Assembly (NCBI RefSeq): GCF_006345805.1
Contig: NC_043017.1
Span: 15,872,001-15,936,000, forward strand
Source of the DNA: Octopus sinensis
Lineage: Eukaryota
Length of the DNA: 64,000 nt
Direction: 5' to 3'
In this document: in pieces, positions 26,855 to 60,720 of the stretch
How positions within the stretch are numbered: the first letter of the stretch is position 1
Layout: each line of letters starts with the position of its first letter
Translations under genes and position numbers: made by a program
Notes under the pieces: model-generated
What the model was told of the DNA's origin: nothing
What the model saw: the letters and a program-made list of their open reading frames with translations, nothing else
Databases searched by the model: none

Positions 26855-27289
26855 ATGCCCTGATGCAGTACCAGGCAGTGGCTCTCATGGCTTCTCATCT
26901 TAACTGGTTGGAAGTGCTATCATGTACATTGTTTTGTCTTCATATAAAAGATGGACAACACCAAATATTCTGCTCAATACCACAGATTTGCTTGTCAGTT
27001 GTTTGACCGTAAGCATTTGAGCATGTCCCTTAGTGGCTGACGATATGTGCATCTCTGATCACGAGCAGAAGTAGTGGGGGAGCATCATAGCCATGTGTTG
27101 AGAGGGATTCTTTGGGGTTTGAATAATTCACCTCTGGAAACATAGGTGTTTCATTCGACAACCTTTAACAAACTTTATCCAAAGATCATCTGAGTGGGAT
27201 GGGCTACTTGATCTGGTATATTGAGCTTCGTATATTTGTACCCCAGTGTCATTTTGATGGCATTCACTACTCTCTCACTCAATAATAAT
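26855..27289 (+). mobile_element. (AAT)n-tailed repeat, probable LINE 3' UTR
   Basis: It begins after TAATAAA and ends CTCTCTCACTC(AAT)n. It resembles a high-copy octopus repeat I recall; no coding motif supports the class. Confidence 0.4.
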
Positions 27290-29974: not shown

Positions 29975-30789
29975 GTGTGTGTATGCATACAATCATACGT
30001 ACATATGCATACATATATATCTATATACATATGCATACACACATACGTATATGAATGTATGTATTCATGCATGGATTGTATGTGCTTATTTTCTTCTTCA
30101 TTGCCAATAAAGAAACTTGATTAATTAAAAAATTTTCTTGCTGGCTACATTGTACATGGGCACCAGCTTATATAATGTATGCCTATATACATACACACAT
30201 ATTTATATATGTATACGTATCATGATATGTATACATTATAAATAGAAAAGCACGCATGCATACACACACACACACACACCCATATTTTTGTCATTCATTC
30301 AGGTTGGGGTGGGGGTACACACAGTCTCTAATTCTTTAGTATTCAGATTACACTGTCAAATGGGATGCTTTTTATATTCACATTGTCTTGAATTAATCCT
30401 GCATTATCTCGTTGCTTTGAGATTTCAGTGATGTGATTGTTTATTTTTAGAATGACATTGTTGGATAGGTGTGAAAGGCCTGATCTGGTCAGTTTGAACT
30501 TACAAAAAAGGTTGAATATTTGGGCCAGATATGATTGGTTTAAATGCTAACGGGATATATATATATATATATATATTACAAAAATAAGAACATATGATTA
30601 CATATATACATACACTGTAATTCCTCAACTATCGTGGGTGTTACGATTCCACCCCCACCACTGTGATAGGTGAAAGTCCACGAAGTAGAAACATTACTGT
30701 GCTGTATATTTTTTATTATTATTTTTATAATTTCTATATATTTATTTTATTCTAAATGCAAAACAACACCACGGAGGAATCGACGTAAG

Positions 30790-31620
30790 CTGGAATGATA
30801 AGCCAGGATATGGAGAGGGATTACTGTATGTGGCATTTGCCGTCTGTGGTGTAGAAACTAGAACAACATGCAGAGCAATGGAGAAAGAGATAGATGCCTG
30901 TGAGATGTGGGTCTTTTGTAGATTGGACAGAATCAGATGGGAAGACAGGGCAGCAAAAGCTGTGGTACTAGGAAAGCTGAAAAAATCCAAAGACATCTAT
31001 TGTTATGAATCAAATCCACTAAACTCTTATATTTTGGAGGTACAATGGAACAAGATTCATTATTCAACACCACAATGACAGGATGTGTGGAGATGAAGAG
31101 AATAAAAGAGAATAAAAAGGCCATAAAAAGAGTTTGTGGACTAATGGCATCAAAGATTGGACTGGAAACAGAGCCTGGATGATTGTTTGAATGCAGCACA
31201 ATACAAAGGAACTGGGTGAGGTTTTTAGCAAAGTGGTCTCCTGGGTTCAGGGATTGCATGTCACTGATGTGTGTGTTGGTACTCACAGAGGGGATGAGTA
31301 GGGACCAAGACTGCTGGGGGTTTGCTGTGCTTGAAGAGTCACATCAAGCTAAGTAAAAGCGGGGCTTCCTTTGCACACAGGCTCATCCCTTGCAACCCTC
31401 TTCACTAATCTTGTGGGCTCGTAAGTGCTGGGGCCACATAAAAATCACCCAGCACATTCTGTAAAGTGGCTGGTGTTAGAAAGGAGCAACCAGCTGTAGA
31501 ACTCATGCCAAAACGGACAACTGGAGCCTGAACAGCCCTTCAGCTGGTCAGCTCCTATCAAACCGTCCAACCCATGCCAGCATGGAAAACAGATGTTAAA
31601 TGATGATGATGATGATGATG
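30790..31620 (+). mobile_element. 5'-truncated RTE LINE (ORF2 C-terminus + 3' UTR + (GAT)n tail)
   Basis: LLYVAFAVCGVETRTTCRAMEKEIDACEMWVFCRLDRIRWEDR matches the RTE pattern LLYGCETWTL..AMEKRLDAFEMW..RRILRISW.DR. It is followed by YFGGTMEQDSLFNTTMTG and WTNGIKDWTG, and ends GCATGGAAAACAGATGTTAAAT(GAT)n. Confidence 0.85.
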
Positions 31621-57385: not shown

Positions 57386-57681
57386 CCTTCGAAACGTGGA
57401 GCAGACGAAACAGGGGCAACTGAAGAAGGGGAATATTCCTTGTATTGTTCGTCTTGTACTCTGTTTTTTCGTTGTTTGAAAACAGGTTTGTTTCCATGTT
57501 TTTGTGTTTATGTTTTCGTTTCTCATTGTGTTCAATGTTTTTTTGGTGTCCTGTACCCATATATGCATGTATATGTACATATATATGTAGGTATGTGCAT
57601 ATATATATGTATATATGCATTTATTTTTTTTATATTATTATATGATCGAATACCACACATCCTTTTCCAAGTAAGTTTTAT

Positions 57682-57734
<53 letters not shown>

Positions 57735-57959
57735 ATCAATATAGGGTGGTGAAAAAAATTTTGTAGAATTCTTTTTGCCACCAGCGGCCTAGTGGGAAAA
57801 AAATTAAATAGTCATAGACCATTTTTAAGTTCAACATCAACAATCAAGGAACGGCCATAATAGGCCATTCACCCACTAGAAATAACAGCCAAAGCTTCAA
57901 CCGCAAATAAAGATCAATTCCGTAAACAGGAGAAAATTTAAAAAAACATTTACCCTGTA

Positions 57960-58065
57960 ATTCTTGTACGATGCACCGTTTCGTCTGCTGTTTAATGGTA
58001 AACTAACCTGATTAAATTAAATCAAGCCAATCTTCCATAGGCCCTCAGATTCTTCAGCAAGAAAT
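57960..58065 (-). ncRNA. Type I hammerhead ribozyme (direct copy 1)
   Basis: Same sequence with one T fewer in the stem I 3' strand (6-bp stem I); predicted cleavage between 57967 and 57966. Confidence 0.75.
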
Positions 58066-58451
58066 AGCCAAGTCGGAACAGATATTTTCACGAGGCATTT
58101 CCGACCCTGCCAAGTTAATATCTGACCTAAAATTTTCAAATCGTCGCACTCGCGCCAAATTTATCGGCAGCAAATAAATATAAGCCGTCGATTCCATTAC
58201 GGAATTAACCAGAAAATTCATAATTAATCAATATAGGGTGGTGAAAAAAATTTTGTAGAATTCTTTTTGCCACCAGCGGCCTAGTGGGAAAAAAATTAAA
58301 TAGTCATAGACCATTTTTAAGTTCAACATCAACAATCAAGGAACGGCCATAATAGGCCATTCACCCACTAGAAATAACAGCCAAAGCTTCAACCGCAAAT
58401 AAAGATCAATTCCGTAAACAGGAGAAAATTTAAAAAAACATTTACCCTGTA

Positions 58452-58558
58452 ATTTCTTGTACGATGCACCGTTTCGTCTGCTGTTTAATGGTAAACTAAC
58501 CTGATTAAATTAAATCAAGCCAATCTTCCATAGGCCCTCAGATTCTTCAGCAAGAAAT
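58452..58558 (-). ncRNA. Type I hammerhead ribozyme (direct copy 2)
   Basis: Reverse complement of 58836-58942; predicted cleavage between 58460 and 58459 on the minus strand. Confidence 0.8.
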
Positions 58559-58835
58559 AGCCAAGTCGGAACAGATATTTTCACGAGGCATTTCCGACCC
58601 TGCCAAGTTAATATCTGACCTAAAATTTTCAAATCGTCGCACTCGCGCCAAATTTATCGGCAGCAAATATTGATTAATTATGAATTTTCTGGTTAATTCC
58701 GTAATGGAATCGACGGCTTATATTTATTTGCTGCCGATAAATTTGGCGCGAGTGCGACGATTTGAAAATTTTAGGTCAGATATTAACTTGGCAGGGTCGG
58801 AAATGCCTCGTGAAAATATCTGTTCCGACTTGGCT

Positions 58836-58942
58836 ATTTCTTGCTGAAGAATCTGAGGGCCTATGGAAGATTGGCTTGATTTAATTTAATCAGGTTAGTT
58901 TACCATTAAACAGCAGACGAAACGGTGCATCGTACAAGAAAT
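58836..58942 (+). ncRNA. Type I hammerhead ribozyme (inverted copy)
   Basis: Stem I ATTTCTTG (58836-43) pairs with CAAGAAAT (58935-42). Core CTGAAGA 58844-50, long stem II 58851-58918, GAAA 58919-22. Stem III ACG/CGT around GTGCAT, cleavage triplet GTA (after 58934). The 10.1-11.1 position is A.C rather than G-C. Confidence 0.8.
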
Positions 58943-59061
58943 TACAGGGTAAATGTTTTTTAAATTTTCTCCTGTTTACGGAATTGATCTTTATTTGCGG
59001 TTGAAGCTTTGGCTGTTATTTCTAGTGGGTGAATGGCCTATTATGGCCGTTCCTTGATTGT

Positions 59062-59105
<44 letters not shown>

Positions 59106-59108
59106 TAT

Positions 59109-59174
59109 AATATGACCATCCCCATGTATAATATATATATATATATATATTATACATGGAGATGGTGTCATATT
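59109..59174. repeat. Short fold-back with (TA)n centre
   Basis: AATATGACCATCCCCATGTATAAT vs ATTATACATGGAGATGGTGTCATATT. Confidence 0.7.
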
Positions 59175-59202: not shown

Positions 59203-59362
59203 TTTATTTGATCTTCCCATTAGGTTTTAGCTTTCATTCATATTATTTTTAGTTTTTACGTCTGTCAAAGTCCTTTCATCACAGAAAGTGTGCCGAAAGA
59301 ACTTTGACAGACGTAAAAACTAAATATAATCGCAATAAAAACTAAAGTGAAGATCAAATAAA
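59203..59362. repeat. Fold-back element
   Basis: 24-bp perfect inverted repeat 59248-59271/59301-59324 plus a 14-bp outer pair 59203-59216/59349-59362. Confidence 0.8.
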
Positions 59363-59459: not shown

Positions 59460-59630
59460 TTACTACTCCTGTGCTGGTGGCACGTAAAAAGCACCCACTA
59501 CACTCTTAGAATGGTTGGCGTTAGGAAAGGCATCCAGCTGTAGAAACTCTGCCTGACCAGACTGGAGCTCTCAGTCAAACCGTCCGACCCCTGCCAGCAT
59601 GGAAAACGGATGTTAATCGATGATGATGAA
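59460..59630 (+). mobile_element. Family D RTE 3' end
   Basis: Same diagnostic motifs and (GAT)n tail. Confidence 0.7.
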
Positions 59631-60269: not shown

Positions 60270-60482
60270 ATCATCATCATCATCGTTTAATGTCTGCTTT
60301 CCATGCTAGCATGGGTTGGACAATTTGACGGAGGACTGGCGAACCAGATGGCTGCACCAGGCTTCAATCTTGATCTGGCAGAGTTTCCACAGCTGGATGC
60401 CCTTCCTAATGGCAACCACTCTGAGAGTGTAGTGGGTGCTTTTACATGCCACCGGCACGAGGGCCAGTCAGGCGGAACAGGC
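60270..60482 (-). mobile_element. Family D RTE 3' end
   Basis: Same motifs reversed. Confidence 0.75.
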
Positions 60483-60536
60483 AATGTGTGTATACTTATA
60501 CATATGTACGCGTGTGTATATATATATGTGTCTGTG

Positions 60537-60692
<156 letters not shown>

Positions 60693-60720
60693 GTATATAT
60701 ATATATATAATATATATATA

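What the first reader, a model, noticed from the sequence alone, without database searches (positions are those of the whole stretch)
58836..58942. Type I hammerhead ribozyme with a very long stem II and a self-complementary stem III, present three times
Seen: an 8-bp stem I (ATTTCTTG/CAAGAAAT) closes CTGAAGA...GAAA and a GTA cleavage triplet in type I order. Stem II (58851-58918, 68 nt) folds as a rod: TCTG/CAGA at the base, an internal loop, then 4 bp + mismatch + 14 bp (with G-U) around TAATTT. The stem III segment ACGGTGCATCGT is self-complementary over 12 nt with two G-U pairs. Established: short, palindromic stem III is the hallmark of hammerheads that cleave as dimers, as in Penelope-like elements, newt satellite 2 and metazoan retrozymes. 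Inference: this is an active or recently active ribozyme. The long stem II and the A.C at 10.1-11.1 are atypical and may define a distinct variant. The other copies are 58452-58558 and 57960-58065 on the minus strand.
Basis: partly seen in the sequence, partly recalled or inferred. Interest (0 to 1): 0.92.

Follow-up and report, generated by a model that had tools for sequence, protein, structure and literature searches.

The report
Hammerhead ribozyme repeat in octopus-like DNA
A young 1.3-kb mobile-element insertion in an octopus-like genome carries three near-identical copies of a self-cutting hammerhead RNA motif with an unusually long arm, and it looks like an odd member of the known animal "retrozyme" elements, not a new kind of ribozyme.

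Summary
At 58836-58942 (+), 58452-58558 (-) and 57960-58065 (-) there is a complete type I hammerhead layout: helix I of 8 bp, CUGAAGA, a 68-nt helix II rod, GAAA, a 12-nt self-complementary helix III, and a GUA cleavage triplet. The minimum-energy fold is the hammerhead junction. No match appeared in 300 shuffled windows.

The three copies are one event, not three. A 493-bp, 37% GC, non-coding unit is present as 1.9 head-to-tail units on the minus strand plus a 0.8-unit inverted copy, all inside a (TA)n microsatellite. The copies differ only by two homopolymer lengths. Partial tandem plus inverted copy in (TA)n is the published signature of Penelope-like-element integration, and tandem type I hammerheads define metazoan non-LTR retrozymes.

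Best reading: a young retrozyme-like, Penelope-mobilised element whose hammerheads pair through helix III to cut out a 493-nt RNA.

Cautions:
- Position 10.1-11.1 is A.C, not the conserved G-C.
- Rfam scores it 18 bits against a threshold of 34.
- No relatives could be retrieved, so there is no covariation evidence.
- Catalysis is untested.

It is a variant of a known kind, of moderate interest.

The parts
57685..57731 (.). (TA)23 microsatellite, left flank of the insertion (target site)
   Evidence: TRF; sequence
57732..58669 (-). Sense array of the 493-bp unit, 1.9 units. It covers monomer positions 284-493, then 1-493, then 1-240. The 3' end abuts (TA)n, with the boundary ambiguous by about 4 nt.
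   Evidence: blastn; alignment to a trimer of the monomer; direct repeats D6/D7 at spacing 492-493
57960..58065 (-). Hammerhead copy 1. Helix I is 6 bp because one A is missing in the 3' strand. Predicted cleavage between 57967 and 57966. A10.1 = 58050, C11.1 = 57983.
58452..58558 (-). Hammerhead copy 2, identical to the plus-strand copy. Predicted cleavage between 58460 and 58459. A10.1 = 58543, C11.1 = 58476.
57967..58459 (-). The only complete excisable monomer at this locus: 493 nt between the two minus-strand cleavage sites, 36.7% GC, no ORF longer than 55 aa. Predicted fold -140.2 kcal/mol linear (z = -5.1) and -135.2 circular.
58667..59065 (+). Inverted partial unit, 0.8 unit, covering monomer positions 226-493 then 1-132. 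Its 5' end meets the 5' end of the sense array head-to-head with 3-nt ATA microhomology at 58667-58669. Its 3' end abuts (AT)n.
   Evidence: (I1-I3)
58836..58942 (+). Hammerhead copy 3, the reported one. Helix I 58836-58843 / 58935-58942; CUGAAGA 58844-58850; helix II 58851-58918; GAA 58919-58921; helix III 58922-58933; A17 at 58934, with cleavage 58934|58935.
58851..58918 (+). Helix II rod of 68 nt: A10.1.C11.1 mismatch, 4 bp, tandem A.G / G.A plus a G-C, a 4x4 internal loop, 4 bp, an A.A mismatch, then 14 bp (5 G.U) and loop UAAUUU. It is strand-specific: -23.9 kcal/mol sense against -10.7 antisense.
58829..58948 (+). Extended helix I. Beyond the 8 bp lie an internal loop (GCU / UA) and a 4-bp closing stem, CUUG 58829-58832 with CAGG 58945-58948. 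This is a possible 'loop 1'.
   Evidence: fold with 30-nt flanks, (z = -1.35 for the 167 nt, so weak evidence)
58328..59065 (.). Inverted repeat of about 342 bp, near-perfect (arms 58328-58669 and 58725-59065, 55-nt spacer), formed by the sense array and the inverted copy. It is a long hairpin in any read-through transcript.
   Evidence: I2, I3; generic miRNA-precursor CM hits
59064..59154 (.). (AT)n microsatellite, right flank of the insertion
   Evidence: TRF; sequence

Best explanation
The locus (57732-59065) is one young insertion of a non-coding, non-autonomous retroelement of the metazoan 'non-LTR retrozyme' kind, placed in an octopus-like genome by Penelope-like-element (PLE) machinery. 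Its 493-nt unit carries one type I hammerhead.

Proposed cycle:
1. A transcript spanning two or more units is made.
2. The monomeric helix III is too weak (-0.2 kcal/mol), so hammerheads of neighbouring units pair through their 12-nt palindromes into a double hammerhead.
3. Each cuts after GUA. On the minus strand the cuts fall at 58460|58459 and 57967|57966, releasing a 493-nt RNA with 5'-OH and 2',3'-cyclic phosphate ends.
4. A host RtcB-type ligase circularises this RNA.
5. The compact, highly paired circle or multimer is copied by a PLE reverse transcriptase at a nick in (TA)n, giving more-than-unit tandem cDNA. Priming from both nicked strands (twin-priming-like) adds the inverted copy.

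Shown: the motif, its fold, dimer energetics, the 493-bp periodicity, near-identity of the copies, head-to-head 5' ends with microhomology, and 3' ends in (TA)n.

Inferred by analogy: cleavage, ligation, circular RNA, and PLE mobilisation.

My estimates: about 0.75 that it is a retrozyme / PLE-type hammerhead element, and about 0.5 that this particular sequence (A.C at 10.1-11.1) cleaves at a useful rate.
For: - Complete type I layout, which is also the minimum-energy fold.
- 0 of 300 shuffled windows match the descriptor.
- Head-to-tail units with cleavage sites 493 nt apart.
- GC is 36.7% and there is no ORF longer than 55 aa. This fits the description of metazoan retrozymes as short tandem repeats with GC below 45-50% and no LTR, PBS or PPT (PMC7229834).
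- Helix III: hairpin -0.2 against self-duplex -17.5 kcal/mol. The cofolded dimer is a double hammerhead at -76.1 against -59.0. The inter-unit helix III appears in the minimum-energy fold of the 937-nt genomic transcript.
- Structure is strand-specific: helix II is -23.9 sense against -10.7 antisense, and the monomer has z = -5.1 against -3.7.
- Partial tandem plus an adjacent inverted copy, with (TA)n as target, is the published PLE insertion signature (PMC8557442).
- Retrozymes are argued to be PLE pLTR derivatives (bioRxiv 10.64898/2026.07.22.740005).
- The host is octopus-like, and Octopus vulgaris has young Penelope families (PMC13282606).
- Mussel retrozyme hammerheads also lack the canonical loop-loop nucleotides, yet they cleave and give abundant circRNA (PMC7229834).
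Against: - A10.1.C11.1 replaces the highly conserved G10.1-C11.1 pair in all copies (PMC4209133).
- The Rfam score of 18.0 is well below the gathering score of 34.
- Helix II is not capped by a loop, so the canonical loop 1 - loop 2 contact is not evident.
- The 493-nt unit is above the 170-400 nt typical of described animal retrozymes.
- There is only one locus in 64 kb and no homologue anywhere I could search. There is therefore no covariation and no proof of a multi-copy family.
- No PLE ORF lies in the window.
- At this locus the inverted copy would trap hammerhead copy 2 in a duplex of about 342 bp in any read-through transcript.
Confidence: 0.7

Rival explanations
1. Dead-on-arrival or decayed copy. 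The repeat descends from a hammerhead-bearing retrozyme or PLE pLTR, but this lineage's motif is catalytically crippled by A.C at 10.1-11.1 and the lack of a loop-loop contact. The element was copied from uncleaved multimeric transcripts, so the ribozyme plays no part here.
For: - The core-adjacent pair is non-canonical in all three copies.
- Rfam is sub-threshold.
- PLE min-hammerheads cleave poorly in vitro, and Naiad PLEs proliferate without hammerheads (PMC4209133, PMC8557442).
- The tandem structure can arise from reverse transcription of a multimeric linear RNA.
Against: - The other 14 core positions, the GUA triplet, all three helices and the palindromic helix III are intact in a copy that is essentially undiverged.
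- The template RNA that produced the insertion already had A.C and was still mobilised recently.
- Compensated changes at 10.1-11.1 occur in cricket satellite hammerheads (PMC2837043), so the pair is not absolutely fixed.
Confidence: 0.2
2. Chance hammerhead-like motif inside an unrelated AT-rich repeat or satellite. The match to the descriptor is fortuitous.
For: - A genome of about 2-3 Gb would contain a handful to tens of chance matches at about 1e-3 to 1e-4 per 64 kb (estimate).
- The Rfam E-value is only 0.045 even on 131 nt.
- There is no covariation evidence.
Against: The chance motif would also have to coincide with:
- a head-to-tail repeat with a PLE-style tandem/inverted (TA)n insertion architecture (PMC8557442);
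- a palindromic helix III (about 5% by chance);
- a helix II that is stable only on the hammerhead strand;
- being the unconstrained minimum-energy fold.
Confidence: 0.04
3. The tandem/inverted arrangement, and hence 'three copies', is an assembly artefact such as a chimeric palindromic long read or a collapsed or expanded repeat. The genome may hold one unit, or a longer array.
For: - The copies are identical except for two homopolymer-length differences, a typical sequencing-error class.
- PLE tandem/inverted insertions are known to trouble assemblies (PMC8557442).
Against: - The junction has an asymmetric 55-nt spacer and 3-nt microhomology.
- Both outer ends sit in (TA)n at different unit positions (240 and 132). 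This looks like a biological integration product, not a read artefact.
- This rival changes the copy number, not the nature of the element.
Confidence: 0.07

Closest known systems
Metazoan non-LTR retrozymes (Acropora, Mytilus galloprovincialis, axolotl; Cervera & de la Pena 2020, PMC7229834)
   Same: - Type I hammerhead once per unit in head-to-tail repeats.
- Low GC, no ORF and no LTR.
- The unit is predicted to fold into a compact, highly paired RNA.
- Weak helix III, with dimer-dependent cleavage as in the amphibian elements.
- The mollusc (mussel) hammerheads likewise lack the archetypal loop 1 - loop 2 nucleotides.
   Different: - The unit is 493 nt, against 170-400 nt.
- Helix II is a 68-nt rod, not about 4 bp plus a loop.
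- A.C at 10.1-11.1.
- Only 1.9 + 0.8 units at this locus, with an inverted copy.
- Expression as circRNA is not known here.
Hammerheads of Penelope-like elements and their pLTRs (Cervera & de la Pena 2014, PMC4209133; Craig et al. 2021, PMC8557442)
   Same: - Type I order.
- Palindromic helix III suited to dimeric cleavage.
- Longer-than-canonical helix II.
- Insertion architecture of partial tandem plus adjacent inverted copy, and a (TA)n target.
   Different: - No RT / GIY-YIG ORF.
- Helix III is 3-4 bp plus a palindromic loop, not absent or 1 bp.
- Helix I is 8 bp, against 4-5 bp.
- There is no single extra nucleotide between A9 and a G10.1-C11.1 pair. Both sides are unpaired (A.C) instead.
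Satellite-DNA hammerheads acting as dimers: newt satellite 2 and Dolichopoda cave-cricket pDo500 (PMC2837043; Forster et al. 1988 as cited in PMC7761336)
   Same: - Hammerhead in a repeat of about 330-500 bp.
- Double-hammerhead model.
- Changes at 10.1-11.1 are seen in the cricket family.
   Different: Those are long satellite arrays with short helix II. Here there is a dispersed-type insertion of fewer than 3 units bounded by a microsatellite.
Rfam Hammerhead_1 (RF00163), e.g. the Schistosoma Sm-alpha type
   Same: Consensus boxes, helix order and cleavage triplet all align across model positions 1-45.
   Different: - A 58-nt insertion in the helix II loop.
- A non-canonical first pair of helix II.
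- 18 bits against a gathering score of 34, so standard annotation would not report it.

Membership tests
Hammerhead ribozyme, type I (Rfam RF00163 / clan CL00010) | Core boxes C3-U4-G5-A6-N7-G8-A9 and G12-A13-A14, the A15.1-U16.1 pair, and H17 (not G) at the cleavage site | tested here: met
   CUGAAGA, GAA, A...U closing helix III, and GUA|C are present in all three copies
Hammerhead ribozyme, type I (Rfam RF00163 / clan CL00010) | Three helices around the core, with helix I open-ended (type I order) | tested here: met
   The unconstrained minimum-energy fold gives the junction, -29.5 kcal/mol, z = -3.44. Copy 1 gives -28.3, z = -2.77.
Hammerhead ribozyme, type I (Rfam RF00163 / clan CL00010) | Conserved G10.1-C11.1 pair at the base of helix II | tested here: not met
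   A58851 lies opposite C58918 (A.C), flagged as non-canonical in the cmscan alignment. It is the same in all copies.
Hammerhead ribozyme, type I (Rfam RF00163 / clan CL00010) | Score at or above the family's curated gathering threshold | tested here: not met
   18.0 bits against 34. There is no hit at gathering threshold in the window.
Hammerhead ribozyme, type I (Rfam RF00163 / clan CL00010) | Canonical metazoan periphery: helix I about 6 bp with loop 1, and helix II about 4 bp capped by loop 2, making a tertiary contact | tested here: not met
   - Helix I is 8 continuous bp, then an internal loop GCU/UA.
- Helix II has 4 bp plus non-canonical pairs, then a 4x4 internal loop and a long rod, with no capping loop.
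- A contact between the two internal loops is conceivable but untestable here.
Hammerhead ribozyme, type I (Rfam RF00163 / clan CL00010) | Covariation supporting helices I-III among homologues | not testable with these tools
   - There are no further copies in the window.
- Pattern scans of the metagenome, viral and prokaryote collections gave only chance hits in coding DNA.
- ORF look-ups and a protein search found nothing.
- No eukaryotic genome collection is available.
Hammerhead ribozyme, type I (Rfam RF00163 / clan CL00010) | Site-specific Mg2+-dependent self-cleavage | not testable with these tools
   Needs in vitro transcription or RNA-end mapping.
Metazoan non-LTR retrozyme | [quoted passage not shown] | tested here: met
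   Cleavage sites lie 493 nt apart on the minus strand, in 1.9 units. The size is slightly above the published 150-450 bp.
Metazoan non-LTR retrozyme | Low GC (below 45-50%), non-coding, no LTR | tested here: met
   36.7% GC. The longest ORF is 55 aa, with no homologue. No tRNA-like part. PBS and PPT were not tested.
Metazoan non-LTR retrozyme | Multi-copy dispersed family in the genome | not testable with these tools
   Only this locus is present in the 64-kb window, and the source genome is not searchable here.
Metazoan non-LTR retrozyme | Expressed as linear and circular RNA of unit length | not testable with these tools
   No transcriptome data are available.
Penelope-like element insertion (autonomous PLE or its non-autonomous derivative) | Partial tandem arrangement with an adjacent inverted truncated copy; microsatellite, especially (TA)n, as target | tested here: met
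   - The sense array covers monomer positions 284 to 240 (two units later), and the inverted copy covers 226 to 132.
- The 5' ends meet at 58667-58669.
- Both 3' ends lie in (TA)n.
- Compare PMC8557442.
Penelope-like element insertion (autonomous PLE or its non-autonomous derivative) | RT plus GIY-YIG endonuclease ORF | tested here: not met
   There is no ORF longer than 55 aa in the element. None of the 8 window ORFs scanned has a Pfam domain. It can therefore only be a non-autonomous derivative.
Double (dimeric) hammerheads | Helix III too weak alone and self-complementary, with a second copy available in the same transcript | tested here: met
   - Hairpin -0.2 against duplex -17.5 kcal/mol.
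- Dimer -76.1 against 2 x -29.5.
- The inter-copy helix III appears in the minimum-energy fold of the 937-nt transcript.

The most novel reading that the evidence does not exclude
Editing-gated hammerhead. The host is an octopus-like cephalopod, a group known (from my own knowledge, not tested here) for pervasive ADAR A-to-I editing.

The one defect in the core, A10.1 opposite C11.1, is an adenosine mismatched with cytidine at the foot of a long (~30-bp, imperfect) double-stranded rod. From my own knowledge, that is the preferred context for ADAR. Deamination would give I10.1-C11.1, which is isosteric with the canonical G-C.

On this reading the long helix II recruits ADAR, and the ribozyme, and hence circRNA release, is switched on by editing.

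The evidence does not exclude this, but nothing tested here speaks for it beyond the geometry. The 3' neighbour (U) is not a favoured ADAR context.
Probability: 0.03. Interest if true: 0.85.

Novelty: new variant of a known kind. Interest (0 to 1): 0.38.

Why it matters
If the family is real and active, it would extend circRNA-forming retrozymes to cephalopods. It would also give a hammerhead whose loop 2 is replaced by a long rod and whose 10.1-11.1 pair is A.C, which makes it a natural test of how much of the periphery and core a type I hammerhead needs.

The locus is also a clean single-insertion example of a retrozyme-like unit integrated with the hallmarks of Penelope-like elements: tandem plus inverted copies, a (TA)n target, and microhomology. 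That bears directly on the current proposal that animal retrozymes are non-autonomous PLE derivatives.

Practically, it shows that Rfam thresholds miss such variants.

Tried and rejected
1. Rfam at gathering threshold over the whole window found nothing. The permissive scan of the whole window was swamped by microsatellite and miRNA-precursor noise. The strong MIR8007 and mir-8515 hits at 58580-58815 are just the long inverted repeat.

2. The search for relatives produced nothing.
- The pattern CTGAAGAATCTG-N50-64-CAGACGAAAC gave 6 hits in metagenome contigs, 1 in viral contigs and 2 in prokaryote contigs. All lie in acidic coding sequences, so they are chance hits.
- Exact look-ups of four ORFs in and beside the element were not on record.
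- A protein search with the 55-aa ORF found no candidates.
- No covariance model was built, because there is only one distinct sequence.

3. A second hammerhead near the element was rejected. The relaxed descriptor hits at 57416-57505 and 27032-27155 rest on 4-5 bp helix I and G.U-only helix II, and are compatible with the shuffle rate of 0.05-0.3 per window. The core-box look-alike at 57399-57427 is not significant by local alignment, and Rfam finds nothing there.

4. Neither a tRNA-derived SINE origin nor a coding origin for the unit is supported. No tRNA was found between 56.5 and 60.5 kb, which includes the element. The 8 best window ORFs, all outside the element, have no Pfam domain.

5. 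An alternative register that restores G10.1-C11.1, or the PLE-type single bulged nucleotide after A9, does not fit, because both strands have one unpaired base.

6. The literature held here has no report of cephalopod retrozymes. It has only a count of 235 Rfam Hammerhead_1 hits in the giant squid genome (PMC6962438).

Full report
**1. What is in the sequence**

On the plus strand:
- AUUUCUUG (58836-58843) pairs with CAAGAAAU (58935-58942) as helix I.
- CUGAAGA (58844-58850) and GAA (58919-58921) are the two core boxes.
- 58851-58918 is a 68-nt helix II.
- ACGGUGCAUCGU (58922-58933) is helix III, closed by A15.1-U16.1.
- A58934 is H17, so cleavage would fall between 58934 and 58935.

The unconstrained fold of the 107 nt is this junction: -29.5 kcal/mol, z = -3.44, 0 of 200 shuffles as stable.

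The two minus-strand copies (58452-58558 and 57960-58065) are identical to it, except that copy 1 lacks one A in the helix I 3' strand. That leaves 6 bp, and copy 1 still folds as a hammerhead.

Rfam's Hammerhead_1 model aligns end to end. It scores only 18.0 bits against a gathering score of 34, with a 58-nt insertion in the helix II loop and the first helix II pair flagged as non-canonical. Nothing in the window reaches any Rfam gathering score.

**2. Is it more than chance?**

I wrote a type I descriptor requiring helix I of at least 6 bp, at least 4 of the first 5 helix II pairs, helix III of at least 3 bp, and H17 not G.
- It finds only these three sites in the window.
- It finds none in 300 dinucleotide-preserving shuffles.
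- Looser descriptors give 0.05-0.3 hits per shuffle and pick up two weak extra sites that I regard as noise.

A rough product of the individual probabilities gives 1e-3 to 1e-4 per 64-kb window. A genome of gigabase size would therefore hold some chance matches, and the motif alone is not decisive. The context is what matters.

**3. Context: one composite insertion**

The three hammerheads are not independent.
- blastn of the repeat against the window finds only three pieces, at 57728-58220, 58220-58669 and, inverted, 58681-59065.
- Aligning them to a trimer of the monomer shows the minus-strand array runs from monomer position 284 through two cleavage sites to position 240. The inverted plus-strand copy runs from 226 through one cleavage site to 132.
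- The only differences are one A and one T in homopolymer runs.
- The two 5' ends meet head-to-head at 58667-58669, sharing ATA.
- Both 3' ends run into (TA)n: 57685-57731 on the left and 59064-59154 on the right.
- The cleavage sites on the minus strand are 493 nt apart, so one complete 493-nt monomer (58459 down to 57967) is flanked by two ribozymes.
- The unit is 36.7% GC. Its longest ORF is 55 aa, with no relative among 5.8 billion proteins, and it has no tRNA-like part.

**4. RNA-level features**

- Helix III alone is marginal (-0.2 kcal/mol), but as a self-duplex it gives 12 pairs and -17.5 kcal/mol.
- Two hammerhead segments cofold into the classical double hammerhead, -76.1 against 2 x -29.5 kcal/mol.
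- In the 937-nt genomic sense transcript, the two helix III palindromes pair with each other in the minimum-energy structure, while both helix II rods form.
- Helix II is stable only on the hammerhead strand (-23.9 against -10.7 kcal/mol), because 5 of the 14 distal pairs are G.U.
- The whole monomer is more structured in sense (-140.2, z = -5.1) than in antisense (-103.2, z = -3.7).
- With 30-nt flanks, helix I continues past an internal loop (GCU/UA) into a 4-bp closing stem. Helix I and helix II each carry an internal loop about 8 layers from the core. Whether these touch is speculation.

**5. Host**

The window is microsatellite-rich eukaryotic DNA. A SINE-derived ORF at 60303-60710 is 68% identical to a hypothetical protein of Octopus vulgaris. 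The source is therefore an octopus-like cephalopod; the species is not established.

**6. Comparison with what is known**

- Metazoan non-LTR retrozymes are short, low-GC, non-coding head-to-tail repeats with one type I hammerhead per unit. They are expressed as 170-400-nt linear and circular RNAs. In amphibians the weak, palindromic helix III makes cleavage dimer-dependent. The mussel hammerheads lack the archetypal loop-loop nucleotides yet cleave (kobs about 0.1 per min) and give abundant circRNA (PMC7229834, PMC7761336).
- Canonical metazoan hammerheads have helix I of 6 bp, helix II of 4 bp, helix III of 1-2 bp with a palindromic loop, and a highly conserved G10.1-C11.1 pair (PMC4209133).
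- PLE copies typically form partial tandems with an adjacent inverted truncated copy and favour microsatellites, (TA)n among them (PMC8557442).
- A 2026 preprint argues that animal retrozymes derive from PLE pLTRs (10.64898/2026.07.22.740005).
- Octopus vulgaris has young Penelope families (PMC13282606).
- The giant squid genome annotation lists 235 Rfam Hammerhead_1 hits (PMC6962438).

The locus fits this picture closely in architecture. It departs from it in four ways:
- a 68-nt helix II in place of a capped 4-8-bp stem;
- A.C at 10.1-11.1;
- an 8-bp uninterrupted helix I;
- a 493-nt unit.

**7. Mechanism**

My best-supported reading is a retrozyme-like, PLE-mobilised element. Multimeric transcripts fold into double hammerheads through helix III and release a 493-nt monomer. 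A host ligase circularises the monomer, and the circle or multimer templates more-than-unit cDNA at a nick in (TA)n. Priming from both strands then yields the inverted copy.

The architecture and energetics are shown. Cleavage, ligation and the identity of the reverse transcriptase are inferred.

At this particular locus, the inverted repeat of about 342 bp (58328-58669 and 58725-59065) would bury hammerhead copy 2 in any read-through transcript. This copy may therefore be a poor circRNA source and a good source of hairpin dsRNA.

**8. Rivals**

- A crippled relic (A.C, no loop contact) that was copied without ribozyme action: about 0.2.
- A chance motif: about 0.04.
- An assembly artefact affecting only the copy number: about 0.07.

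The most novel reading not excluded is that the A.C mismatch at the foot of a long duplex is an ADAR site, and that A-to-I editing restores an I-C pair and switches the ribozyme on. That would be attractive in a cephalopod, but it is supported only by geometry (about 0.03).

**9. Verdict**

This is a structurally unusual member of a described class, seen as a single young insertion, with no comparative or experimental evidence for activity obtainable here. Novelty: new variant of a known kind. Interest: about 0.38.

Noticed in passing
window 58328-58669 and 58725-59065: The sense array and the inverted copy form a near-perfect inverted repeat of about 342 bp with a 55-nt spacer. It produces strong but sub-threshold hits to many miRNA-precursor models (MIR8007 at 106 bits, mir-8515 at 62 bits). 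These reflect a generic long hairpin, not a miRNA. Any read-through transcript would be long dsRNA, a likely Dicer, ADAR or piRNA substrate.
   Followed up: partly
window 57399-57427 (+): The sequence 'AGCAGACGAAAC aggggcaa CTGAAGAA' has a 12-mer and an 8-mer identical to the two hammerhead core boxes, but in reversed order. It lies about 300 nt upstream of the insertion. The local alignment score is within the shuffle null and there is no Rfam hit. It is probably chance, though it could be a scrap of an older element.
   Followed up: partly
window 58667-58669, 57732 and 59065: The inverted copy starts at monomer position 226 and the sense array ends at position 240, so the outermost template coordinates overlap by about 15 nt around TTGATTAA after three units. 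This could be coincidence (about 6%). It could also hint that the RNA template had defined ends there and was not a circle.
   Followed up: no
window 59480-59625 (-) and 60271-60480 (+): These are copies of an octopus-type SINE (catcatcatc...gtttaa.gtc.gctttccatgctggcatgggttgg). The ORF at 60303-60710 is 68% identical to an Octopus vulgaris 'hypothetical predicted protein', which is therefore probably an annotated SINE fragment.
   Followed up: partly
window 59246-59326: An isolated, near-perfect hairpin of about 80 nt (tttttacgtctgtcaaagt ... actttgacagacgtaaaaa), with sub-threshold miRNA-model hits. It could be a MITE end or a small foldback element.
   Followed up: no
window 1-64000: The whole window is dominated by TG/CA/TA microsatellites and SINE debris (39% GC). 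None of the 8 ORFs scanned has a Pfam domain, and the long ORFs are low-complexity translations of microsatellites. The ORF at 30731-31075 ends in a motif (…RAMEKEIDACEMW) that, from memory, resembles the C-terminal part of LINE reverse transcriptases, but Pfam gave no hit.
   Followed up: partly
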